A stretch of DNA of 63,481 nt, the filler included, from Octopus bimaculoides (lineage: Eukaryota), in assembly GCF_001194135.2 (NCBI RefSeq). It is 10 parts of 8 records of this genome, joined end to end, with 100 filler letters (N's around TTAATTAATTAA, not from the genome) between each part and the next. Parts side by side here need not be neighbours in the genome. Positions count along the whole stretch, not along the records: positions 1 to 19,657 come from NC_068995.1; 9 more parts are not named here. One strand, 5' to 3'. Positions 281 to 18,780 of the stretch are shown piece by piece; the stretch's first letter is position 1, and the number at the start of each line of letters is the position of its first letter. Below the pieces are notes generated by a model that saw nothing but the letters and a program-made list of their open reading frames with translations, was not told the origin of the DNA and did not search any database. The position numbers and the translations under genes are program-made.

Positions 281-1205
281 AACATGAGTTTACCTTAGAT
301 ATTACAATACTAACTAATATTACACCTGTCTTTATTTCATCCTAATTTTTACCTTGATTTTTACCTTCTGTTAAATTTCAATTTATTTCCCGTCGTGTTT
401 ATATTAATCCGTTTATTTCGTAAACTATATATCTAGAAATCTTTCTCTAGTTTTGTTTCTCTTTCCCTACCTCTTTTAAGTCTAACGATGAATATATAAC
501 GTTCCATATATTCCTTGCTATATATAACATTTTCTCCCACGACCGTAATCCACTGTTTGCTGTTAGGTATCTTGCTAAGTCTCACTGGTATAGTAAAACG
601 TTTTATTAATCTTATTACTTATTGTTGTTCAAATATCACTATTTCGAATGGTGACTATCTGTGTTTAAACTTATGTAGAGTGTCGATGAAAGAAATCTAA
701 AATAACTGTGATATTCGTTGACATATAATGAATCCGTTGTACCTGTATCAGTTTATAAATTACACAGCAGAATTCTGTAATTTATTTTATATATACATTA
801 ATGCAGGTATGTAAAATAATTTATTATTTATGATACACTAAATAATAATTTTTATATGATAAAGGTACAAAAAGATCGGAGTTGTATGGATGTCAATTTG
901 TGAAATGAATTTTTTCATCTTATACCTCTTCTCTTTCTTTATATCTGATACACTCATGAAATAATCATAACCATTTGGATTTATTGGATTTCACCTGCAT
1001 CGGATTATATAGTACAACCCTTTGTGTTGAGTTGCTTGATATATAGTTTGCAGCATGAGACATTAAAACGCTATTTTTATTGTTAGTGAAATTCGTATAT
1101 TGACCAATAAGTATTTATATATATACAGGATTTGGACAAAATAATGAAAACACCTTAAATTTTCAAAGAAATTTATTTTAATGGGGTAGGGTCGCCTTGG
1201 CATTT

Positions 1206-1432
1206 TTTTTTCATGATCTTTGACAACTATATCTGGTCTATTTGCCTTAATTTCTCTATCTGTGTGTATTGGCATATCCCAGAGTATGGTTGCTTTCTCG
1301 TTTTCTGTGACCTTTTCTGGCGTGTGTTTATACCATCTTTTTCTGTTGTTATTCCATAGTGTTTGCATAGCTTCCAGTGTATGTAGGTCCCAGCTCTGTC
1401 GTGTCTGTGAATATATTCCTTCTTAGACACCG
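1206..1432 (-). mobile_element. RLE-type non-LTR retrotransposon (R4/Dong-like) C-terminal fragment, frameshifted
   Basis: Two overlapping minus-strand frames give KKEYIHRHDRAGTYIHWKLCKHYGIT and WYKHTPEKVTENEKATILWDMPIHTDREIKANRPDIVVKD: the RHD motif plus the PD motif of a restriction-like endonuclease. Confidence 0.85.
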
Positions 1433-3070: not shown

Positions 3071-4064
3071 TATTATTTATTCATATATTAGAACTGAGAT
3101 TGCTAATCTCATTATCATTATCATTATTACTATGACTATTTTCCTTCCATATCAGGGCTCAAAGTCATTTAAAAATCTGACGCTAGGAAGAAGAAACAGA
3201 CAACCACAATCCAGGCACGTTAACATATTCCCAGAGAGATATTGGCCGGCATGAGGGAGATTTAGAGTACTTATATGGCATAAATATGGGTAAGGAGGAA
3301 CTGGTAAAACTGATTGTCCTCCAGATTTTGGAGCAATTTATTTCGGTTATATTTTAGTACACCAATATAGTTCAATAAGCATATTTTAACAAATGGTTAA
3401 AATACGTGTGTGTACGGTTACATGTGAGTATATGAAATGTGTGTGAGGGTGTGTGTGGCTTTACTTCCACATACGCCAGATTAATTTAATTCGTCCTTAG
3501 TCGAGACACCATTTGTTAATGTCCTGTTTGTATTTGTATTTTTGTACCATTTCTCCGGTTTTTGTCCTTGTTTTCGCATACATTCGCTTGCTTTATTCCA
3601 GGGAATCTAGTGCTCTTATCTTAGATATTCTTGGGGCTGGACAGAGTGGAGCAGACTCGTGTGTAACCGCTCGAAACTGCTGAGGAAATCTGGAACTTGA
3701 CTCGATATAGAAAACACCGAATGACCCTTCCTTGTTTTCCTGTCCTTTTTTTATAGTTTAACTGTCCGGATGTTTTCTTGTCACCTGTTGCGTTATTGTC
3801 TCATTTCTTGTTTTATTTTACNNNNNNNNNNNNNNNNNNNNNNNNNNNNNNNNNNNNNNNNNNNNNNNNNNNNNNNNNNNNNNNNNNNNNNNNNNNNNNN
3901 NNNNNNNNNNNNNNNNNNNNNNNNNNNNNNNNNNNNNNNNNNNNNNNNNNNNNNNNNNNNNNNNNNNNNNNNNNNNNNNNNNNNNNNNNNNNNNNNNNNN
4001 NNNNNNNNNNNNNNNNNNNNNNNNNNNNNNNNNNNNNNNNNNNNNNNNNNNTATATCCTTTTAT

Positions 4065-4579: not shown

Positions 4580-5556
4580 NNNNNNNNNNNNNNNNNNNNN
4601 NNNNNNNNNNNNNNNNNNNNNNNNNNNNNNNNNNNNNNNNNNNNNNNNNNNNNNNNNNNNNNNNNNNNNNNNNNNNNNNNNNNNNNNNNNNNNNNNNNNN
4701 NNNNNNNNNNNNNNNNNNNNNNNNNNNNNNNNNNNNNNNNNNNNNNNNNNNNNNNNNNNNNNNNNNNNNNNNNNNNNNNNNNNNNNNNNNNNNNNNNNNN
4801 NNNNNNNNNNNNNNNNNNNNNNNNNNNNNNNNNNNNNNNNNNNNNNNNNNNNNNNNNNNNNNNNNNNNNNNNNNNNNNNNNNNNNNNNNNNNNNNNNNNN
4901 NNNNNNNNNNNNNNNNNNNNNNNNNNNNNNNNNNNNNNNNNNNNNNNNNNNNNNNNNNNNNNNNNNNNNNNNNNNNNNNNNNNNNNNNNNNNNNNNNNNN
5001 NNNNNNNNNNNNNNNNNNNNNNNNNNNNNNNNNNNNNNNNNNNNNNNNNNNNNNNNNNNNNNNNNNNNNNNNNNNNNNNNNNNNNNNNNNNNNNNNNNNN
5101 NNNNNNNNNNNNNNNNNNNNNNNNNNNNNNNNNNNNNNNNNNNNNNNNNNNNNNNNNNNNNNNNNNNNNNNNNNNNNNNNNNNNNNNNNNNNNNNNNNNN
5201 NNNNNNNNNNNNNNNNNNNNNNNNNNNNNNNNNNNNNNNNNNNNNNNNNNNNNNNNNNNNNNNNNNNNNNNNNNNNNNNNNNNNNNNNNNNNNNNNNNNN
5301 NNNNNNNNNNNNNNNNNNNNNNNNNNNNNNNNNNNNNNNNNNNNNNNNNNNNNNNNNNNNNNNNNNNNNNNNNNNNNNNNNNNNNNNNNNNNNNNNNNNN
5401 NNNNNNNNNNNNNNNNNNNNNNNNNNNNNNNNNNNNNNNNNNNNNNNNNNNNNNNNNNNNNNNNNNNNNNNNNNNNNNNNNNNNNNNNNNNNNNNNNNNN
5501 NNNNNNNNNNNNNNNNNNNNNNNNNNNNNNNNNNNNNNNNNNNNNNNNNNNNNNNN

Positions 5557-5610
<54 letters not shown>

Positions 5611-6492
5611 TATCAATATATATATGTATATATGCATGCATGTGCATTATCGATATTTAGTTATAGTAATAACATATTTTTCACTCAGTATCAGTACGAC
5701 ACACGTGTAGTGAGAAGAAAGGTTTTTATAATGTATCGGAAATGTCCCTTAGGAGTAACTTATATTCATCTATTAGTTACACGAATTGGTTATCAATGTA
5801 TTTACTGTTCTCACATTCAGGCAAAGTCCTTTCCTATTGAAGGCGTTGAATGTGCTATTTTCTTCTCTAACGCCATCCTTGTGTGTTTAGAGCTGTAAGC
5901 ATTTGTGTATACGTAACGAATGGGTATATATATACACATACATGTATACATATGCACATGCATTTATATGCATGGATGGATGGGTGTGTGTATGTNNNNN
6001 NNNNNNNNNNNNNNNNNNNNNNNNNNNNNNNNNNNNNNNNNNNNNNNNNNNNNNNNNNNNNNNNNNNNNNNNNNNNNNNNNNNNNNNNNNNNNNNNNNNN
6101 NNNNNNNNNNNNNNNNNNNNNNNNNNNNNNNNNNNNNNNNNNNNNNNNNNNNNNNNNNNNNNNNNNNNNNNNNNNNNNNNNNNNNNNNNNNNNNNNNNNN
6201 NNNNNNNNNNNNNNNNNNNNNNNNNNNNNNNNNNNNNNNNNNNNNNNNNNNNNNNNNNNNNNNNNNNNNNNNNNNNNNNNNNNNNNNNNNNNNNNNNNNN
6301 NNNNNNNNNNNNNNNNNNNNNNNNNNNNNNNNNNNNNNNNNNNNNNNNNNNNNNNNNNNNNNNNNNNNNNNNNNNNNNNNNNNNNNNNNNNNNNNNNNNN
6401 NNNNNNNNNNNNNNNNNNNNNNNNNNNNNNNNNNNNNNNNNNNNNNNNNNNNNNNNNNNNNNNNNNNNNNNNNNNNNNNNNNNNNNNNNNNN

Positions 6493-7799: not shown

Positions 7800-9104
7800 T
7801 ATATNNNNNNNNNNNNNNNNNNNNNNNNNNNNNNNNNNNNNNNNNNNNNNNNNNNNNNNNNNNNNNNNNNNNNNNNNNNNNNNNNNNNNNNNNNNNNNNN
7901 NNNNNNNNNNNNNNNNNNNNNNNNNNNNNNNNNNNNNNNNNNNNNNNNNNNNNNNNNNNNNNNNNNNNNNNNNNNNNNNNNNNNNNNNNNNNNNNNNNNN
8001 NNNNNNNNNNNNNNNNNNNNNNNNNNNNNNNNNNNNNNNNNNNNNNNNNNNNNNNNNNNNNNNNNNNNNNNNNNNNNNNNNNNNNNNNNNNNNNNNNNNN
8101 NNNNNNNNNNNNNNNNNNNNNNNNNNNNNNNNNNNNNNNNNNNNNNNNNNNNNNNNNNNNNNNNNNNNNNNNNNNNNNNNNNNNNNNNNNNNNNNNNNNN
8201 NNNNNNNNNNNNNNNNNNNNNNNNNNNNNNNNNNNNNNNNNNNNNNNNNNNNNNNNNNNNNNNNNNNNNNNNNNNNNNNNNNNNNNNNNNNNNNNNNNNN
8301 NNNNNNNNNNNNNNNNNNNNNNNNNNNNNNNNNNNNNNNNNNNNNNNNNNNNNNNNNNNNNNNNNNNNNNNNNNNNNNNNNNNNNNNNNNNNNNNNNNNN
8401 NNNNNNNNNNNNNNNNNNNNNNNNNNNNNNNNNNNNNNNNNNNNNNNNNNNNNNNNNNNNNNNNNNNNNNNNNNNNNNNNNNNNNNNNNNNNNNNNNNNN
8501 NNNNNNNNNNNNNNNNNNNNNNNNNNNNNNNNNNNNNNNNNNNNNNNNNNNNNNNNNNNNNNNNNNNNNNNNNNNNNNNNNNNNNNNNNNNNNNNNNNNN
8601 NNNNNNNNNNNNNNNNNNNNNNNNNNNNNNNNNNNNNNNNNNNNNNNNNNNNNNNNNNNNNNNNNNNNNNNNNNNNNNNNNNNNNNNNNNNNNNNNNNNN
8701 NNNNNNNNNNNNNNNNNNNNNNNNNNNNNNNNNNNTATGTGTGTGTGCGTGTGTGTGCGTGTGTGTGCGTGTGTGTGTATGTGTGTGTGTGTGTTCTCGG
8801 GTAGTTTTAACTCTTTATTAACTTTAGTGTAAATAAACCTGATTACATTTATACTTTGAATAAGAAAACTGTCCTGCTACTAGGAATATTACATTTATTT
8901 ATAAGCAAAAACTGTATGAAACGCAAGTATATTTGTGTCCTAAGAAATTTGCTTCCTAACCAATGGTGCCAGGAAATGTCACATTGCATGGATTCGTGGC
9001 AAAATGTCTGCTATTGTACTTCCGGAACTACAAAATCCCTGCAGGTAGATTTAGTAGGCGTACTCTAAAAGAATCATGCTGTATATGAATGTGTATCTGT
9101 GTGT

Positions 9105-9651: not shown

Positions 9652-10085
9652 GGCGGCGAGCTGACAGAAACGTTAGCACGCCAGGCAAAATACTTAGCGG
9701 TATTTCGTCTGCCGTTACGTCTGAGTTCAAATTCCTCCGAGGTCGACTTTGCCTTCCATCCTTTCGGGGTCGATAAATTAAGCACCAGTTACGCACTGCG
9801 GTCGATATAATCGACTTAATCCCTTTGTCTGTCCTTGTTTGTCCCCGCTATATTTACCCTCTTGTGGACAATAAAGAAATAAGAAACGTCAGCATGCCGG
9901 GCGAAATGCTTAGCAGTATATCATCTGTTTTTACGTTCTGAGTTCAAATTCCACCGAGCTCGACTTTGGTTTTCATCCTTTCGGTGTCGATAAATTAAGT
10001 ACCAGTTGCGTATTAGGGTCGATCTAATCGACTGGCAACCTCCCCAAACATTTTGGGACTTGTGCTTAGAGTAGAACAGAATATT
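9652..10085 (+). mobile_element. Head-to-tail dimer of SINE family A (9652-9882 and 9883-10085)
   Basis: A-box-like TGACAGAAACGTTAG and B-box-like GAGTTCAAATTCC. The second unit restarts at AAGAAACGTCAGCATGCCGGGCG. Confidence 0.88.
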
Positions 10086-11008
10086 TTGCACAATACATTA
10101 ACTAAAAAGCTTATGAAAAACGAGCATTTATACACAGAAAAATATTTCAAAATGAAACATTTATATCAGCGCAAATAAATGAGATGAAATTCATACGTTG
10201 TTATTAAATTTGATAATTTTATGTTTTATAAAGTAGCCCCTAGTCTTTAATCTTTAATTTTGCGCTACGATTTTCAGCCCCACTAGGTGTTCCTGCTACT
10301 GTTATACTAATGTGTGTTTGCTGCCTTTCATTAAACTATCATTTAGACTTGTTTGACTCAAATTGTGTTTTCAATTATATAACATATCACTGAACTTTTT
10401 CAGGTTCCTGATTCATCCTGTCACTTAATCAGTAGCAAAGTATTCGGCAATCTTGAATTGCCTTGAATTACATCAAAGCAAGACGTACCATTTGAAAGTG
10501 TGACGTCTGCTGGAGCAATCAAGAAAAGAATCAAAACATATGATATATATTTACAAAGGCAATTTAAAATATATTTGGGAAGTTAAATAATATCAATAAG
10601 CGCATCACAATCTTAATTCAATGGAATATGCGAGGATAAAAGAATAGGCTGAGACGACTAGTCAAAGCAAAGAAATGTATGTCTATATGGAACTTTTATA
10701 GGGAATTTTTATAGAACCAATCAATGAGAATACCATTTCTAATACCAAAATTATATTGTCGCTATGTCTACTGACGTACAGTAATTTTCTATTAATTGTA
10801 GATCATATACTTTGTGAATTGTGGGAATCGTCGATTCACAGGAAAATGGATTTTCGTTGTCTATCTTTACAGTGTTATGCTGTGTGAAAAACTCATTCAA
10901 CAAGAATCATATCTCAACTAAATTTTAGAGATTTCCTCAATTTCATATTCACATGAAAACATTTACAGAAAAAAATTACGAAGATTTAAATTTTCAATGT
11001 AGGAGAAA

Positions 11009-12199
11009 ATGTTGCTCACAGAGTGTTTTATTTATACACTTTGCTCAATTATATCGATCGTAAATTCCGATGCAACGCACAATGACGAAAGATTATTGAA
11101 AGATAGTATGCTTTCAAATTATCGCAGTGATATAAGACCTGTTATAAATTTGTCGACAACAGTTAATATGAAGATTTATACGACACTTTACACCCTCTAT
11201 GATTTGGACTTTATAAATAACTTACTAACGGCTCGATATATCATTAAAGCTGTTTGGTTTGATGAACATCTTAAGTGGAACCCTTTGGACTATAACAACA
11301 TTACATATATATATATACCAAAAAAGAAATTATGGAATCCAGGTTTAGTAATGTGCAATTCAATGACACAGTCAGAAGAAAAAGATAGCTTGGATGATGT
11401 TCTCATTTATTACGATGGATTTGTGAGAATGCTATCATTTACATTACTACAAACTTATTGTCAAGTGAATGCTTACAGCTATCCATTCGATGAGCACAAA
11501 TGTGAAATTCGCATGTGTAGTGCAACGTACCATACTGATGAAGCAAATGTAACATCATTTCTACTTAATGTGTACTCTGAAGAAGAAAATTATAAATGGT
11601 ATATGAGCATTAGCGATCAGGAAACCTACAGTTCTTACGTAGTGGGCACAGTATATTTGCGACGTAAGCTCACAGTCGGTATCATAGCTATGCTAATTCC
11701 GACAGTAATGATGACTATTTTAACAATTTTTGTCTTTCTTCTGCCTCCTGAATCAGGTGAGAAAGTTTCTCTAGCAACAACAATATTTTTATCAAATGTC
11801 TTGTATCTTGTTCAAATTGATAAGAATACACCGGCAAATTCAAAATATCCTTCACTGCTTATTTTATATTTAATGGTGTTGTCATTGGTAAGTGGCATCG
11901 CCACACTTGGATCGGTGGTTATAAGCAAGTTGTATGTTAATCAATCATCACAAGAAAATAAGTTGAAATTATCAGAGGAAAGTAAAAAGAAGTCACAGAG
12001 AAACAAAGTTGAGGATATTTCAATTATTTCTATGGAGCATCCGGAGACTTTAATGAAAGGTGGTCTCCCAAGTAAGAAAAAGAGAAATTTCGTTATTGAC
12101 TATATGCGACTGGATGCGATATTTTTAAAACTTATTATTGTCGCCTTGTTAATAATTTCAATATCATTCACGTCTTTGTTGTTTTCCCCACTGGAGTAA
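11009..12199 (+). CDS. Intronless atypical nicotinic acetylcholine receptor-like Cys-loop subunit, cephalopod chemotactile receptor (CR) family
   Basis: 396-aa uninterrupted ORF. Signal peptide about 1-20; RPV motif; WxD..L.W and WNP motifs. Cys-loop C151-QVNAYSYPFDEHK-C165 (13 residues, YPFD). M1 ends LLPPESGEK; M2 VSLATTIFLSNVLYLVQI; M3 about 283-308; short M3-M4 loop; M4 about 368-392. No loop C vicinal CC, and loop B Trp is replaced (CSATY). Confidence 0.93.
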   Translation: MLLTECFIYTLCSIISIVNSDATHNDERLLKDSMLSNYRSDIRPVINLSTTVNMKIYTTLYTLYDLDFINNLLTARYIIKAVWFDEHLKWNPLDYNNITYIYIPKKKLWNPGLVMCNSMTQSEEKDSLDDVLIYYDGFVRMLSFTLLQTYCQVNAYSYPFDEHKCEIRMCSATYHTDEANVTSFLLNVYSEEENYKWYMSISDQETYSSYVVGTVYLRRKLTVGIIAMLIPTVMMTILTIFVFLLPPESGEKVSLATTIFLSNVLYLVQIDKNTPANSKYPSLLILYLMVLSLVSGIATLGSVVISKLYVNQSSQENKLKLSEESKKKSQRNKVEDISIISMEHPETLMKGGLPSKKKRNFVIDYMRLDAIFLKLIIVALLIISISFTSLLFSPLE

Positions 12200-13323
12200 G
12201 AAAATATTATTTGTTACTCTTTCTTCATATCTTTATAAAAAAAAAAAAGTAATACTGTTCTTTCTCGAAATCCAACATACATTAGATCCGCAGTGACAAT
12301 TATGTTTTGTTTCGCTGGGGAGCAGCTGTATCTAGAAATTTCTCAGTACTGCTTGAAGATAAAAGCACTAAGCACTGTTCAATATAATTCATTTTCAATG
12401 ACAAAAATTTGTAAGATGCTCTGTCCTGTATTTTTACCCACATAAGTAATACGGATAATAAAAGGGCAAGGATATAATTGACTCTGCAGAATTCCGTCGA
12501 ATGTATGTGTGTATTTTTGGATCACCACTCGATAACCGATAATTGTAACTTGAACAATATTTCTTGTTAGCTACTGCAACATAAATAGACATGAGTAGTT
12601 CGCAATATTTAGTGCTTATTTGTTTACTGTGGTGGTATACTTAAGAGAAAGGAAAGCTCATTAAGATGTTTTGAAATGCCCAATTTCTTACCGAAGCAAT
12701 TGAAAATTACAGGAACAGGTATGGCCATATTGTTAACGATTTCCCTTCACAGACTTCTATTCTCAGTTTCAAATCCTTTCTATTACGCTCCTGATTGGTG
12801 CCTTCTAAAGTTTTTCCGACAAGCCGAGAGTCTTGTGAGCAAACATGCAAGAACGAAATTCTTCGAAATTACCTCGAATATGTATGAGTGAAGGACAAAT
12901 ATATTTTTGTGTCAAAATTATGATTACAAGTTCAAATACACGTATATACGCATTCGTACACGTACGTATATTAATATAATCATATATACGCAGTTCAAAA
13001 AAGTTTTGCATATATCGCTATACTCATGCACTCGTACATGCAACTGCTTTTAAGTATATAAATTGCGAAAAGAATGCATGCACAATTGCTTATACATACA
13101 TGCATAATATTTATTACGTACACACACGCACACACACACAAACACACAGATAAAACAAGACTCGCACACAGATATATATTGACGTATGCATATGTATATA
13201 TATTTTTATTTATGTACATCTAACTATTCATCTATCTAGCTATATATATACACATAACACACACACATATATATATAGATATAGATAGATATATATATTT
13301 ATATATATATGTATATCTATCTA

Positions 13324-13362
<39 letters not shown>

Positions 13363-13579
13363 NNNNNNNNNNNNNNNNNNNNNNNNNNNNNNNNNNNNNN
13401 NNNNNNNNNNNNNNNNNNNNNNNNNNNNNNNNNNNTATATATATATAATATATAAACACCAGTGTTTACAATGTTTCACGAAGGAGAAATATAATTGTCA
13501 CTAATTGTGTCTAAGGTGTTAGAAAACACCGACAATGCTAGAAATAAGAGCTAAAGCGCTCTATTGCTGTAGTTAACGC

Positions 13580-14349
13580 ACATGAATGAAAACATAGACT
13601 GAAAGCATACTATTTATGTTTTCCTTTATTTGTGTACTTTGAATTCACGAATCGCTGTGAATTAATGAAGGAAATATTTTAAAATTATACATATTTTTCT
13701 TAAATATGGAAATATACTGGTGAAGAGTGTAATATGCGGCAAATTTAAATTAAATTGATTTTTCAAATTAATTAATTTAGTTTGTACATTAAACACGAAA
13801 CTAATACAGTATTTACCACAAAATTTTAAATAAACTCTTATGCATCTCGCCCGCTTTACAGTTATTTGCTATCAAGGCTAATTATTAGCTTTTTATCGTT
13901 TACTGGTTTCAGTCCAAGACTGGGGTCATGCTGGTGCACGATGCTTTTATTTGAACATCATATTGAACATGTATGGAAGATAGTTTCACTGTTTCTCTCT
14001 CTCTCTCTCTGTGTTTCTATATATACATATTTGCCACCTCGGCAAAAAAAGCATGTCGAATCGTGGATTGAAAGCATAGCTTTTTCTTTCCCTCTAATTT
14101 TGGGAAAATATTTGAGCAACTTGAATTACGAATCGCTGTAATGAATAAAGGGAATATTTTAAATTTATACATATTTTCCATAAATATGGGAATACACTGC
14201 TCAAGAGGGTACTATGTGACACATTTAATTTAAATTGATTTTTTTAAAATTAATTTATTTAATTTGTACATTGATCACGAAACTAGTACAGTATTCACCG
14301 CTATAATTTTAAATAAAATTTTATTTATCACGCCCGCATAAACAGTAGC
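13580..14349. repeat. Diverged direct duplication of about 280 bp (13580-13864 vs 14050-14349)
   Basis: Shared blocks TTGAATT(C)ACGAATCGCTGT, AAATTGATTTTT, TTGTACATT..CACGAAACTA.TACAGTATT and CGCCCGC; roughly 75-80% identity by eye. Confidence 0.8.
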
Positions 14350-14357
14350 TGCACGAC

Positions 14358-14585
14358 AACGTGAAGTATATTTGCCATTTCAATGTGGCTAACCGCTAAA
14401 GGTGGATGCTACTGCACCTTGTAGCCCCAGGAGGACACCTCCTCCAGCTGGCTATTGATACATTTTATGGACACCGAAAGTGTATCAAAAACCAGCTGGA
14501 GGAAGTATCCTCCTGGGGCTACAATGTGCAGTAGCACCCACTCTTAGCGGTTAGCCACATTGAAGTGGCAAATATCCTTCACGTT
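14358..14585. repeat. Fold-back palindrome of about 228 bp (MITE-like), arms about 108 bp
   Basis: AACGTGAAG.ATATTTGCCA.TTCAATGTGGCTAACCGCTAA...TGTAGCCCCAGGAGGA is mirrored by TCCTCCTGGGGCTACA...TTAGCGGTTAGCCACATTGAA.TGGCAAATAT.CTTCACGTT. Confidence 0.92.
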
Positions 14586-15429
14586 ATATAATATNNNNNN
14601 NNNNNNNNNNNNNNNNNNNNNNNNNNNNNNNNNNNNNNNNNNNNNNNNNNNNNNNNNNNNNNNNNNNNNNNNNNNNNNNNNNNNNNNNNNNNNNNNNNNN
14701 NNNNNNNNNNNNNNNNNNNNNNNNNNNNNNNNNNNNNNNNNNNNNNNNNNNNNNNNNNNNNNNNNNNNNNNNNNNNNNNNNNNNNNNNNNNNNNNNNNNN
14801 NNNNATATATATATATATATACACATGTACAATTTAAGAAATTGAGTCAACATGAAGGAGTACGCTGGGACAGTTATTTTTTAATCACTACAATTATTTC
14901 TATCAAACATGGTTCTTCAAAAATAGAGGTATTTGATTATGCATCTGTTTGCATAATGAGATCCTGCTGCGTTTCCTCATGTGATATTCAAATGTCTCCT
15001 GAGTTTAACATCTTCGACTTCAAGGCCATCTCATCCATCCGTCTTGGGTTAACTTTTGTAGCAGTTGGATGATTCACGCTGTTTACTGCCACAGTGTGTT
15101 TGTTGGACTGCTATGAGTGGTAGTGGATGACTCTTTTGGTAGCGGCTGATCGCTGACCTGTTCTTCATGGTTGGATACACTTGCTAATTTTATTACCTGA
15201 TCTTTAGTATTTAGAATAAGTCTAAGGTTATGCTCCAGCGTGGCCGCAGTCAAATGATTGGAACAAAAATAAAAGACTACATATCTAAAGAATAAAAGAA
15301 TACATACAATAAATGAATACTTACATACATACATACATACATACACCTCACCAACTCTAGACACAAATCAATGAAACTTTATGGCAGCTCTTCATACCGA
15401 GCTCATGGCGGAAAGTTCGTCACTTTAAA

Positions 15430-17655
15430 ACATGAACTCAGGACGATGAGCGAGAAACTCTGCTATCGCAAGTGAATTTTTGAGCGAGCCAATATCAATC
15501 GCAAGTTTGTTTCCAGCCCACAAGCTTTCTACAGAGAGATTAAGCAGGAAAACATTACTACTATGAAAACTCCCTGCCAAGAAAATGTACAGTCATTCTG
15601 GTCAAAAATTAAGAACGGAAAGAGGGATTGCAACCTGAATGCATCATAGTTAAATACAAGTGAGAGAGAGTACGGTTATAGCAGTAGGCAAACTGCAGAA
15701 TGAGAAGGCACCTGGCAGGGACCTAATAGTTGGATATTGGTACAAGAAGCTGACATTTCATAGAAACCAATTGATATGTATGTTCAAAAGGACTATGAAA
15801 GGTCAGACTGGTATAACACATTGGCTTGTTACAGCAAGGACAAATCAAGAATGGAATCACCGAGACGGCCGGAAATTGCAGAACCATTACTTGCCTAAAC
15901 ATTATGTACAAACTGTACACAAGTTGTCTCAACCGAATCCCTCCAACTCCATTGTGAGTCGAACAACATTGTGACTGATGAACCGGCTGGTTGAAAGAAG
16001 GCAGTGTGGGGATGTGACAAGCAAATTCTAATAAACAAAGTCTGACAATAAGAAGGCATTCGAATCTATCCCCCATTCATGGCTTTTGAAGTGCCTACAT
16101 CTTGCAAAAGTACCTACTACCTTTTTTGCTGCTATAGAGACTCACAAAGACATGGACAACTATTCTTACCCTTGCAACTAAGAACAAAATAATTGTTTTT
16201 AATAGTATAGGCATTAAAAGGGAATATTCCAGGGAGATAATCTTTCTGTACTTCTTTTCAGTTTGGCACTGAATCCATTATCGTTCTTACTGAAGAAAAC
16301 TCTCAGAAACATCAATTTCACTCACAATTTCTTTGCAGACAACCTGATAAGTTATGCTAAAATTGGTAAAGAATACAAAAAACAAGTGGAATTAATAACA
16401 ACATTTTCAGCTGATATAGGCATGGAATTTAGTCAAAAGAAATGTTCATATTTGGTTATAAAAAGAGGAAAGTAAGTCCCCTAAACCCAAAACTTGTGCA
16501 TCAACCGTCTCTCTGTCTCGGCACAAGAATGTTACAAGTACCTAAGCATAGACGAAAATGTATCATATGTAGCCACAGTATTAATGCCGTCCTGACAGTG
16601 TAGTGAGCAACATTGTTCGATTTGACAGTGAATTCCTCAAGAAACACTCTCATAATGATGATCTCCTAAAGAGCCCCAAAACAGCTGGGCTCTCTTACCT
16701 CAGTGAAGACCAGGACGGAAAGCACTCAATGTACAAAAGAAACAAAAAAGACCAGGCATGGGTATGTTGCCCGGAAGCTTGAAGAGGACAGTAGAAGTGA
16801 CATGAAGAACAGCCTCTCTTGGATACCAGACCACTACATCACATCACACTTTGAAGGCTATGCGTTTGCAATCTAGGAACAGGAGATTGCCACAAAGTAA
16901 GTAGCAAGCAAGAGTCACATTGACGCTCTTGTAATCCCAAGGTGCAACCGCATGTGTAGGCTATGTCGGGTTTCTGTGGAAGACATTACGCATGTGATTA
17001 GCAACTTTTCTAAAATGTCATCACGGCACTACCTCCCTATGCAGCACGATGTTGTCGCTAAAACAATTTACAATGCCATCCACAAAAAAGACTGTCATGA
17101 ATTTAACTTAGAAATTCCCTCTGTTATGGAATACATTCAGAAACACCAACTCAAGGAATACTGGCGGAATATTCCCATCAAAACGTCTGTCAACTGTAAG
17201 CATAACAAGACGGATATTGTTGTTTAGAACAGGGGCGGGGGCAAAGATATGTACCATCATACAGGTTAGCTACCCTGCTATATAGATATAAATGTCTCTT
17301 TGAAAATCGAAGAAAAAGAGGCTATCTTTGGACAACTGCTTCGAAACCTCCAGCTTCTATCTCCAGACTATGAATTCATATTCATACCAATAATAATTGG
17401 AACACTAGGTTTTGTTAGTAAATGTTTAAAGAAGAATCTGGATAAACTGGGATTTTCAGGAAAAGAAATCGACCGGTTGATTTGTACAAGTCCAATCTGT
17501 GAGTGGAACAGTAGAAATATGCAAGACATTTCTCAACTTCCAAATGGTAATTTATTTGTGTTAACTACACCCCAAAGACGGCGCCTTGTATCTTTGTTGG
17601 AAACCGGCTCCCTCCTCACTGGAACATTTATAATAAATCAAAAATAGAAGAGACA
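15430..17655 (+). mobile_element. Degenerate RLE-type LINE (RT + CCHC knuckle + PD-(D/E)xK nuclease), many stops and frameshifts
   Basis: EKAPGRDLIVGYWYKK, AFESIPHSWLLKCL, IFQGDNLSVLLFSLALNP, HNFFADNL (degenerate xxDD motif), YKYL, CRLCRVSVEDITHVISN, QHDVVAK, KHNKTDIVV, IPIIIGTLG. Confidence 0.9.
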
Positions 17656-18780
17656 CCCATCCATCCATCCATCCATCTATCCGTACGTACGTACGTACGC
17701 ACATACATTACATATACATGAATATGAAAATATTTACTCAAATCCTATCAAACTCTTAAACTGTTGGCGGGCGAGATTATAGCTTTGTGCATGTCAGTTT
17801 TTTTAACCGCTTTTAATATTTTGCCGACAAATATTACATAGTGCGGTAGTTTCTTAATGTATTTGTGTATGATAATTTCATTTTATTTATTGCAGGTAAC
17901 TGAAATGAAATACAAATTGTACGACTTTAAACTCACCTTTTTGTATTGAGAAACGTTAAACATTTTTTATTTAGGCGTTATTTGAATTCGCTAGTACAGA
18001 GCCCTGTTTCTTATTGAATTTTTTTCTACGAAGCCACATTAATTTAGAGACATTTTTTAGACTACTATTAGCTTAATGTGTTTTATATTGTACATAAATT
18101 GGAAATGCTGTTATACAAGTTGCCATCTACCTTCCTAACAATTGCGAGGAGGTTTTTAGTAATTTGTACAGTAGCATATACATTACACAAGCAGGTTTCC
18201 TAAAGGAGTTATAATTACTAGAACTTAAATTAAGAGTAATGTCAAAATAATTAATTAACTGAATTAACATTAATAACTGAAGTAATTTTATGGTTAAACA
18301 GTTTGAAAGTATTAATTGCATCTTTTATGTCTGTTACTGGTGGTCATTTCTGTTATAGATGAAAGTTAATACCTCTAAAATATTACATTAGGCTAGGAAG
18401 TTTTCTAAAATAAATGAACCATCAACTTACGGACTTCTATTCTGAGCCATAAACAAATGATAAAAGCAAAAGAAAAAAATGCACCATAAGAATATCAAAG
18501 TCTCTATGCCTTCTTTTTGCATATTATAATAAAAGCAATGTTAAATTCCGAAGACTTAATGTTCTATTGCAATCGAGATCTAGTACATTCATTGAGATTT
18601 ATTAATGAAAAGGTACACATCTTAAATATCAAAAAGCTACAAATCGCCACCGCAATAACACAATGATAAATATCTCATTCTAGCATATTTAGTGTGGATA
18701 TTTTGTTTTATATACAATCTGATATATTGACCATCGATATGCGAACTTTTCTGAAATGTACCATAGTTCATAACACAATG

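What the first reader, a model, noticed from the sequence alone, without database searches (positions are those of the whole stretch)
11009..12199. Intact chemotactile-receptor-type channel with the acetylcholine aromatic box dismantled
Seen: a complete intronless Cys-loop subunit. Aligned by eye to alpha7 nAChR, loop D W55 becomes I78, loop A Y93 becomes C116 and loop B W149 becomes A172. Loop C has no YxCC and is about 10 residues shorter (W197 to RR is 23 aa, versus 33 in alpha7). Established: octopus suckers express tandemly duplicated, intronless, ACh-insensitive Cys-loop chemotactile receptors that detect poorly soluble compounds. Inference: this is one CR paralog, possibly still orphan, and its divergent pocket would set its own ligand specificity. 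The family itself is not new.
Basis: partly seen in the sequence, partly recalled or inferred. Interest (0 to 1): 0.75.

Follow-up and report, generated by a model that had tools for sequence, protein, structure and literature searches.

The report
Octopus chemotactile receptor paralog, already catalogued
This is an intact, intronless gene for one of the known "taste-by-touch" chemotactile receptor channels of the octopus Octopus bimaculoides; the family and this gene are already in public databases, but its ligand pocket differs sharply from that of the one well-studied member, CRT1.

Summary
Window 11009-12199 (+) is one uninterrupted 396-codon ORF for a Cys-loop channel subunit. The interpretation also holds. 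The best solved-structure match is octopus CRT1 (E 2e-135, end to end); nAChRs reach about 1e-32. The protein falls inside the octopus chemotactile receptor (CR) clade with 100% bootstrap. The gene is the fourth of at least eight CR genes spread over about 240 kb of O. bimaculoides chromosome CM046615.1. It is under purifying selection against an ortholog from another octopod (dN/dS 0.43; 0.17 in the membrane core). It is not new: a 363-aa form is in NCBI and the 396-aa form in UniRef. The analysis adds four points. Only 2 of 9 CRT1 ligand-contact residues are kept. A 4-residue loop C deletion occurs only in this orthogroup among the 25 octopus-clade CRs compared. M1, M2 and the vestibule glutamate match CRT1. 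C116 and C170 are present or absent together across CRs. Expression, ACh insensitivity, ligand and orphan status could not be tested.

The parts
11009..12199 (+). Complete intronless coding sequence of a chemotactile receptor subunit (396 aa plus TAA stop)
   Evidence: ORF list; Pfam LBD and TM domains; end-to-end match to CRT1; the exact 396-aa sequence is in UniRef and the 363-aa form starting at M34 is in NCBI/nr/eukprot
11009..11068 (+). Signal peptide, residues 1-20 (MLLTECFIYTLCSIISIVNS)
   Evidence: It aligns with the CRT1 N-terminal stretch that is missing from the mature 8EIS chain, which starts at full-length residue 21. AlphaFold predicts a helix at 2-18. The collection's gene call starts at M34 and omits it.
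11069..11668 (+). Extracellular ligand-binding domain, residues 21-220. The residues at the nine CRT1 ligand-contact positions are T59, I78, L142, F144, A172, T173, Y189, Y207 and S208. E124 is the vestibule glutamate. N-glycosylation sequons lie at N47, N97 and N180.
   Evidence: Alignment to CRT1 and alpha7; CRT1 contact residues taken from bioRxiv 10.1101/2025.03.03.641191 and 10.1101/2025.10.28.685082; 48.5% identity to CRT1 over this domain
11459..11503 (+). Cys-loop, C151 to C165 (13 residues between the cysteines)
   Evidence: Both cysteines sit in invariant columns across all 37 aligned sequences and align with alpha7 C128 and C142
11354..11356 (+). Codon of C116 (loop A, at the position of alpha7 Y93). 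Proposed disulfide partner of C170, whose codon is at 11516-11518.
   Evidence: Both cysteines are present in 27 of 31 cephalopod CRs, both are absent in 4, and neither ever occurs alone. Both are absent from all 10 non-CR nAChR-like sequences. The disulfide itself is an inference.
11597..11665 (+). Shortened loop C, W197 to R219: 23 residues, no YxCC
   Evidence: The length is 23 in the window protein and its ortholog P0002, 27-28 in the other 23 octopus-clade CRs, and 33 in alpha7
11669..11938 (+). M1-M2-M3 membrane core, residues 221-310. M1 and pore-lining M2 are identical to CRT1.
   Evidence: 92% identity to CRT1. The only differences are N273T, A276T, S278T, I285M, V290L, L293M and V294L, all in the M2-M3 loop or M3. 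AlphaFold helices at 223-244, 250-273 and 283-331.
11939..12196 (+). Short intracellular loop (roughly residues 311-360, low model confidence) and M4 (roughly 361-392)
   Evidence: pLDDT is below 50 for residues 332-362 and a helix spans 357-392. Identity to CRT1 is 33% in the loop and 61% in M4.
10997..11002 (+). Two-codon upstream ATG-TAG, in frame, two codons before the start codon
   Evidence: Read directly from the sequence. In the ortholog the same ATG is open and gives MKEKM.... The shared Met at 11009 aligns with the CRT1 start.
12457..12462 (+). Candidate polyadenylation signal AATAAA, about 260 nt after the stop. This is weak evidence.
   Evidence: The hexamer and its surroundings are also present in the ortholog's 3' flank. 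No transcript evidence. AT-rich DNA contains many such hexamers.

Best explanation
The ORF encodes one subunit of a pentameric ligand-gated cation channel of the cephalopod chemotactile receptor (CR) family. It comes from the tandem CR array on Octopus bimaculoides chromosome CM046615.1. By analogy with CRT1, five subunits assemble as a homomer or with other CR subunits in sucker sensory cells. A poorly soluble contact ligand binds at the extracellular subunit interface, in the site where nAChRs bind acetylcholine. Binding opens an M2 pore identical to that of CRT1, with the calcium-favouring vestibule glutamate retained (E124, equivalent to CRT1 E104), and cation and Ca2+ entry excites the cell. 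The acetylcholine aromatic box is absent. The residues at the CRT1 contact positions are T59, I78, L142, F144, A172, T173, Y189, Y207 and S208, under a loop C four residues shorter than in other octopus CRs, so ligand selectivity should differ from CRT1. Shown here: gene integrity, family membership, tandem location, the pocket substitutions, pore identity and purifying selection. Inferred: expression site, ACh insensitivity, channel function, ligand class and stoichiometry.
For: A single intact 396-aa ORF carries both Pfam pLGIC domains. CRT1 is the best PDB sequence match (E 2e-135, full length) and the best fold match (8eis_A, E 6.3e-38, TM-score on target 0.88, rmsd 2.7 A). The NJ tree gives 100% bootstrap for the octopus CR clade and 82% for a subclade that contains the chromosomal neighbours P0004, P0005 and P0009. 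Eight CR genes lie between 37.81 and 38.05 Mb of CM046615.1, and the window gene is at 37.889 Mb. P0004 and P0009 are head-to-tail. The aromatic box and vicinal cysteines are absent. M1 and M2 are identical to CRT1 and E124 is kept. An ortholog in a second octopod aligns colinearly, flanks included. Against it dN/dS is 0.43 overall, 0.17 in M1-M3 and 0.47 in the extracellular domain, with synonymous change exceeding non-synonymous change at Fisher p = 1.7e-7. The literature states that CRs are nAChR-derived, ACh-insensitive, activated by hydrophobic ligands, number 26 in O. bimaculoides and are intronless (PMC11526382, PMC10338036, PMC13174522).
Against: These tools give no transcript, expression or functional data for this gene. 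Y58, W122 and F192 coordinate every CRT1 ligand analysed, and mutating them abolishes CRT1 responses (bioRxiv 10.1101/2025.03.03.641191). Here they are I, L and S, so the subunit might bind ligands poorly on its own. L153, described as the conserved back wall of the CR pocket, is T here. The two orthologs share only 4 of the 9 pocket residues, which fits relaxed constraint as well as it fits diversifying selection. The Logan contigs that carry the ortholog end in microsatellites and look genomic, so they are not evidence of transcription.
Confidence: 0.8

Rival explanations
1. It is a CR subunit that does not form a ligand-gated homomer. It would act only as a modulatory or structural partner in heteropentamers, contributing one face of a binding site or none, as non-alpha or accessory nAChR subunits do.
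For: CR subunits can combine into multimeric complexes (bioRxiv 10.1101/2025.03.03.641191). Three aromatic contacts essential in CRT1 (Y58, W122, F192) are replaced by I78, L142 and S208, and loop C is 4 residues shorter than in every other octopus CR compared. M1 and M2, identical to CRT1, would be compatible with co-assembly.
Against: The pocket still carries hydrophobic and aromatic side chains (I78, L142, F144, Y189, Y207). The extracellular domain is still under net purifying selection (omega 0.47, p = 8e-4). Nothing in the sequence shows that it cannot form a homomer.
Confidence: 0.15
2. It is a recently inactivated or unexpressed duplicate (a cryptic pseudogene) whose reading frame has not yet decayed.
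For: Large tandem chemoreceptor arrays commonly hold pseudogenes. A 177-aa TM-only CR fragment lies 5 kb from the neighbour P0017. This lineage has diverged faster than CRT1: 72% versus 81% protein identity to orthologs found in the same sequencing runs, presumably one species. No expression data are available.
Against: The ORF is intact in two species with dS 0.37. dN/dS is 0.43 overall and 0.17 in the membrane core, significantly below 1. Signal peptide, Cys-loop, pore and M4 are all complete.
Confidence: 0.04
3. It is a canonical acetylcholine-gated neuronal nAChR subunit.
For: It shares the pLGIC fold and the Pfam domains. NCBI automatic names for its paralogs read 'acetylcholine receptor subunit ...-like'.
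Against: Sequence identity to nAChRs is only 20-29% in the alignments, against 56-57% to CRT1. It lies inside the CR clade with 100% bootstrap. W55, Y93, W149, Y188, C190-C191 and Y195 are all missing. The coding region is intronless.
Confidence: 0.01

Closest known systems
Octopus bimaculoides CRT1 (formerly CR518; UniProt A0A0L8FVQ9; PDB 8EIS, 9E6B)
   Same: Same family, species and chromosome (its native gene was not located; P0006 is the tagged construct). 56-57% identity overall and 92% in M1-M3, with M1 and M2 identical. Same signal-peptide and mature-chain layout, same Cys-loop, same C116/C170 pair and same vestibule glutamate. No aromatic box and no vicinal cysteines. Coding region intronless.
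   Different: Extracellular-domain identity is only 48.5%. Seven of nine ligand contacts differ: Y39T, Y58I, W122L, L153T, S169Y, L191Y and F192S. Loop C is 4 residues shorter. It belongs to a different subclade, with P0004, P0005 and P0009. CRT1 orthologs in three species keep YYWFALS(L/M)F at the nine contact positions, whereas this orthogroup has TILFATYYS and RLVFATSYG.
Squid CRB1 (PDB 8EIZ), a bitter-sensing chemotactile receptor
   Same: Cephalopod CR family and pLGIC fold. E 1.3e-38 by sequence and 1.5e-26 by fold.
   Different: Only about 28% identity. It represents a different lineage from the octopus CR clade; I did not place CRB1 itself in the tree.
Human alpha7 nicotinic acetylcholine receptor
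   Same: Ancestral scaffold: Cys-loop, four TM helices, and the -1' glutamate in the GEK motif before M2, typical of cation-selective pLGICs.
   Different: About 20% identity. All aromatic-box residues and the loop C Cys-Cys are lost. Loop C is 10 residues shorter. The intracellular loop is much shorter. The coding region is intronless.

Membership tests
Cephalopod chemotactile receptors (CRs) | Pentameric ligand-gated ion channel subunit architecture: signal peptide, beta-rich extracellular domain with a Cys-loop, and four TM helices | tested here: met
   Pfam PF02931 and PF02932. C151 and C165 sit in invariant columns. The AlphaFold model shows the beta sandwich and four helices.
Cephalopod chemotactile receptors (CRs) | Groups phylogenetically with CRs, not with canonical nAChRs | tested here: met
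   NJ tree with 200 bootstraps: octopus CR clade 100%, cephalopod CR clade 100%. The canonical nAChR-like sequences and alpha7 fall outside. The E-value gap is 2e-135 against about 1e-32.
Cephalopod chemotactile receptors (CRs) | Loss of the acetylcholine aromatic box and of the loop C vicinal cysteines | tested here: met
   W55->I78, Y93->C116 and W149->A172. Y188, C190 and C191 are deleted. Y195->S208.
Cephalopod chemotactile receptors (CRs) | Intronless coding region | tested here: met
   One ORF covers CRT1 residues 6-399 without interruption. PMC13174522 states that CRs are intronless. Introns in the UTRs could not be examined.
Cephalopod chemotactile receptors (CRs) | Location in a tandem array of CR paralogs | tested here: met
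   Eight CR genes between 37.808 and 38.048 Mb of CM046615.1, spaced 13-63 kb apart; the window gene is the fourth. Within the 19.6-kb window itself there is only this one copy.
Cephalopod chemotactile receptors (CRs) | Flat hydrophobic orthosteric pocket with the conserved inner-pocket residues Y58, F124, A152 and L153 (CRT1 numbering) | tested here: inconclusive
   F144 and A172 are kept. Y58 becomes I78, still hydrophobic. L153 becomes T173, polar, as in the ortholog.
Cephalopod chemotactile receptors (CRs) | Expression in sucker or arm sensory epithelium | not testable with these tools
   No RNA-seq data were accessible. The Logan contigs for the ortholog appear to be genomic.
Cephalopod chemotactile receptors (CRs) | Insensitive to acetylcholine and gated by poorly soluble ligands | not testable with these tools
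   This needs heterologous expression and electrophysiology or calcium imaging.
Canonical nicotinic acetylcholine receptors | Aromatic box (loops A, B, C and D) that coordinates the quaternary amine; Cys-Cys pair in loop C of alpha subunits | tested here: not met
   All box positions are substituted or deleted.

The most novel reading that the evidence does not exclude
This orthogroup (the window gene plus P0002) may be a distinct functional subtype of octopus CR. It combines a loop C deletion not seen in any of the other 23 octopus-clade CRs with replacement of the 'conserved' inner-pocket residues (Y58I, W122L, L153T, F192S). The result should be a wider, more hydroxyl-rich pocket. Such a pocket could be tuned to a ligand class not yet linked to CRs, for example larger or more hydrogen-bonding molecules than terpenoids and steroids. 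Alternatively the subunit could serve as an obligate heteromeric partner that reshapes the pockets of neighbouring subunits.
Probability: 0.3. Interest if true: 0.45.

Novelty: already known. Interest (0 to 1): 0.25.

Why it matters
CRs are a well-studied case of a neurotransmitter receptor turned into an external chemosensor. Published function and structure concentrate on CRT1, with a few other CRs expressed. This gene adds no new kind of system. It is, however, a clear natural variant for asking how pocket residues and loop C length set CR ligand specificity. The conduction machinery (M1, M2, vestibule glutamate) matches CRT1 while seven of nine ligand contacts differ. Chimeras or back-mutations between the two proteins would therefore separate ligand recognition from permeation.

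Tried and rejected
1. The primary papers (van Giesen 2020, PMC7605239; Allard 2023, PMC10228259; Kang 2023, PMC10262778; Allard 2023 primer, PMC11055638) are not held. CR properties therefore come from two bioRxiv papers of the same laboratory, a review and third-party papers.
2. I could not link the gene to a published CR name such as CR840. Names for window-encoded proteins are masked, and no supplements are held for the mating paper.
3. I could not identify the species behind SRR11869384-94, the source of the orthologs P0002 and P0003; a literature search for the run numbers found nothing.
4. I looked for further CR copies or pseudogene fragments in the window with tblastn, using 31 CR proteins. 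There were no hits outside the ORF.
5. The Logan contigs of the ortholog cannot serve as transcript evidence. They are colinear with the genomic flanks and end in (AG)n and (CA)n microsatellites, so they look genomic.
6. Pfam on the individual short ORFs of the downstream repeat region gave nothing significant. Masking the stops as X then revealed RVT_1.
7. No upstream non-coding similarity to the paralog loci was found, other than dispersed repeats.
8. The canonical-nAChR reading is rejected (see rival explanations).

Full report
1. THE OBSERVATION

Window 11009..12199 (+) is a single 396-codon ORF. It is the only ORF of at least 80 aa overlapping 10500-12700. Pfam finds Neur_chan_LBD (E 1.3e-33) and Neur_chan_memb (E 3.1e-13).

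I wrote the mature human alpha7 sequence from memory and verified it as identical to PDB 9j37_A residues 1-325. In a 41-sequence MAFFT alignment:
- alpha7 W55 aligns with I78, Y93 with C116 and W149 with A172.
- Y188, C190 and C191 fall in a gap, and Y195 aligns with S208.
- The Cys-loop cysteines C128 and C142 align with C151 and C165.

Loop C, counted from W197 to RR, is 23 residues here and 33 in alpha7.

The ORF aligns with CRT1 from residue 6 to the last residue, so the coding region is intronless. The start at 11009 is supported in three ways. An in-frame TAG lies two codons upstream (ATG TAG GAG AAA ATG). There is an A at position -3. The Met aligns with the CRT1 start. The gene model in the collection (P0001, 363 aa; in NCBI/nr/eukprot) starts at M34 and drops the signal peptide. 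The 396-aa form is also public, in UniRef.

2. WHERE IT COMES FROM AND WHAT SURROUNDS IT

The window is Octopus bimaculoides assembly GCA_001194135.2, chromosome CM046615.1 (58.16 Mb), at about 37.88-37.90 Mb. Looking up seven paralogs on the same chromosome gives a tandem array:

| Protein | Position on CM046615.1 (Mb) |
|---|---|
| P0005 | 37.808 |
| P0004 | 37.832-37.837 |
| P0009 | 37.851 |
| window gene | 37.889 |
| P0017 | 37.933 (plus a 177-aa TM-only fragment 5 kb further on) |
| P0025 | 37.957 |
| P0018 | 37.983 |
| P0013 | 38.048 |

. The overlapping loci of P0004 and P0009 show that these two genes are head-to-tail. The 19.6-kb window holds no second CR copy or fragment (tblastn with 31 CR proteins). 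The rest of the window is AT-rich repeat DNA with six assembly gaps, SINE-like repeats and a decayed retrotransposon.

3. WHAT IT IS

- By sequence, the best solved structures are octopus CRT1 (9e6b/8eis, E 2e-135 and 4e-133), then squid CRB1 (1.3e-38), then nAChR and 5-HT3 subunits (1e-32 and weaker).
- In the 5.8-billion-protein collection, the best hits other than the window's own gene model are 30 cephalopod CR-clade proteins (29-73% identity in the MAFFT alignment). They are followed by mollusc, annelid, echinoderm and nematode nAChR-like proteins at 21-25%.
- An NJ tree with 200 bootstraps gives 100% for the octopus CR clade and 100% for the wider cephalopod CR clade. It gives 100% for the window protein plus P0002, and 82% for a subclade that also holds its chromosomal neighbours P0004, P0005 and P0009. 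CRT1 sits in a different subclade with its O. sinensis ortholog.
- An AlphaFold2 model (mean pLDDT 79) has the expected beta sandwich and four helices. Its best PDB fold match is CRT1 8eis_A (E 6.3e-38, TM-score on target 0.88, rmsd 2.7 A, 61% identity).

4. IS THE GENE ALIVE?

P0002 (392 aa; from Logan assemblies of SRR11869385, SRR11869390 and SRR11869391) is encoded on 2.3-2.4-kb contigs. These align colinearly with window 10567-12958, flanks included, so P0002 is an ortholog in another octopod. Nei-Gojobori counts over 388 codons give:

| Region | dN/dS |
|---|---|
| whole gene (dN 0.158, dS 0.366) | 0.43 |
| M1-M3 | 0.17 |
| extracellular domain | 0.47 |
| intracellular loop | 0.61 |

. 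The excess of synonymous change is significant (Fisher p = 1.7e-7 for the whole gene, 8e-4 for the extracellular domain). Flank identity (72-73%) equals identity at synonymous sites (71%), so only the coding sequence is constrained. The gene is under purifying selection.

The lineage is nevertheless evolving faster than CRT1. In the same sequencing runs (presumably one species), the CRT1 ortholog P0003 is 81% identical to CRT1, while P0002 is 72% identical to the window protein.

5. HOW IT MOST LIKELY WORKS

Shown:
- M1 and pore-lining M2 are identical to CRT1. The seven differences in residues 221-310 all lie in the M2-M3 loop or M3.
- The GEK motif before M2 is kept. So is the vestibule glutamate that gives CRT1 its high Ca2+ permeability (CRT1 E104, here E124).

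The conduction pathway should therefore behave like that of CRT1.

The published CRT1 ligand contacts are Y39, Y58, W122, F124, A152, L153, S169, L191 and F192 in mature numbering, which is full-length numbering minus 20. They map to T59, I78, L142, F144, A172, T173, Y189, Y207 and S208, so only F144 and A172 are kept. CRT1 orthologs in three species keep YYWFALS(L/M)F at these positions. The window's ortholog has RLVFATSYG.

Loop C is 23 residues only in the window protein and P0002, and 27-28 in the other 23 octopus-clade CRs compared.

Inferred: the subunit forms a ligand-gated, Ca2+-permeable cation channel in sucker sensory cells. Its pocket is wider and richer in hydroxyl groups, and less capped, than that of CRT1, so its ligand spectrum should differ.

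The main rival is that it works only as a heteromeric partner. Y58, W122 and F192 are needed for all CRT1 ligand responses and are missing here.

C116 is not an isolated substitution. C116 and C170 (the position of alpha7 G147, loop B) are both present in 27 of 31 cephalopod CRs. Both are absent in the other four (P0015, P0020, P0024, P0025). Neither occurs alone, and both are absent from all ten non-CR sequences. This all-or-none pattern suggests a CR-specific disulfide linking loops A and B where the aromatic box used to be. That is an inference. I could not inspect coordinates, and I do not know whether the structure papers already describe it.

7. COMPARISON WITH WHAT IS KNOWN, AND NOVELTY

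CRs are an established family. They are derived from nAChRs, form homo- or heteropentamers, are not gated by ACh, and are activated by hydrophobic ligands. There are up to 26 genes in O. bimaculoides, and they are intronless (PMC11526382, PMC10338036, PMC13174522). CRT1 and CR840 were the first cloned, and a later screen used five CRs.

This gene meets every sequence-level and genome-level membership criterion I could test. Its protein is already in NCBI and UniRef. It is therefore already known as an entity. Whether it has been de-orphaned could not be established.

VERDICT

Interest is low to moderate (0.25). It rests only on the unusual pocket and loop C of this orthogroup.

Noticed in passing
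window 15300-17760 (+); RVT_1 match at about 15977-16544: A decayed non-LTR retrotransposon lies about 3.5 kb downstream of the CR gene. With stop codons masked, one frame hits Pfam RVT_1 (E 2.2e-16). One frame of 15000-17999 has 50 stops. GC content is higher here (0.39-0.40) than in the rest of the window.
   Followed up: partly
window 1063-1368 (-) and 16952-17227 (+): Two short ORFs end in similar motifs (ILWDMPIHTDREIKANRPDIVV and NIPIKTSVNCKHNKTDIVV). From memory, this looks like the C-terminal tail of invertebrate LINE ORF2 proteins. Neither has a Pfam hit.
   Followed up: partly
window 9666-9816 / 9882-10033; 13627-13854 / 14109-14337 / 14358-14585 (inverted): Dispersed repeats of 150-230 bp (83-87% identity) flank the gene on both sides. 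Copies also lie beside the paralogs in loci L005 and L006. They are probably SINE-like elements, not regulatory sequence shared by the CR genes.
   Followed up: partly
window 3822-4051, 4580-5556, 5996-6492, 7805-8735, 13363-13435, 14595-14804: Six assembly gaps (runs of N), bordered by TA, TG or ATAC-type microsatellites, produce the long 'X' ORFs in the ORF list. ORF 1456-1758 is a poly-Asn (AAT/AAC) microsatellite.
   Followed up: no
window 11009-11107 (residues 1-33): The public 363-aa gene model (P0001; NCBI/nr/eukprot) starts at M34, so it lacks the signal peptide and the start of the N-terminal helix. The 396-aa ORF, present in UniRef, matches the CRT1 N-terminus.
   Followed up: yes
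L006 10001-15376 (paralog P0004; CM046615.1 37.832-37.837 Mb): The NCBI model of neighbour P0004 (459 aa) carries an N-terminal extension of about 70 aa from an upstream exon (gene span 5.4 kb). No other CR has it and it has no Pfam domain. It is probably an annotation artefact.
   Followed up: partly
L009 16036-16569 (5 kb downstream of paralog P0017): A 177-aa ORF with only the Neur_chan_memb domain. It is likely a truncated CR pseudogene within the array.
   Followed up: no
proteins P0015, P0020, P0024, P0025 versus the other 27 cephalopod CRs: The cysteines at window positions 116 and 170 are kept or lost strictly together across CRs: 27 have both, 4 have neither, none has only one. This suggests a CR-specific disulfide between loops A and B.
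   Followed up: partly
protein search: O. sinensis and O. vulgaris hits: No annotated O. sinensis or O. vulgaris protein is more than 57% identical to the window protein, while an unidentified octopod (SRR11869385/390/391) has a 71-73% ortholog. The orthogroup may have been lost, or may be unannotated, in the O. vulgaris/sinensis lineage.
   Followed up: no
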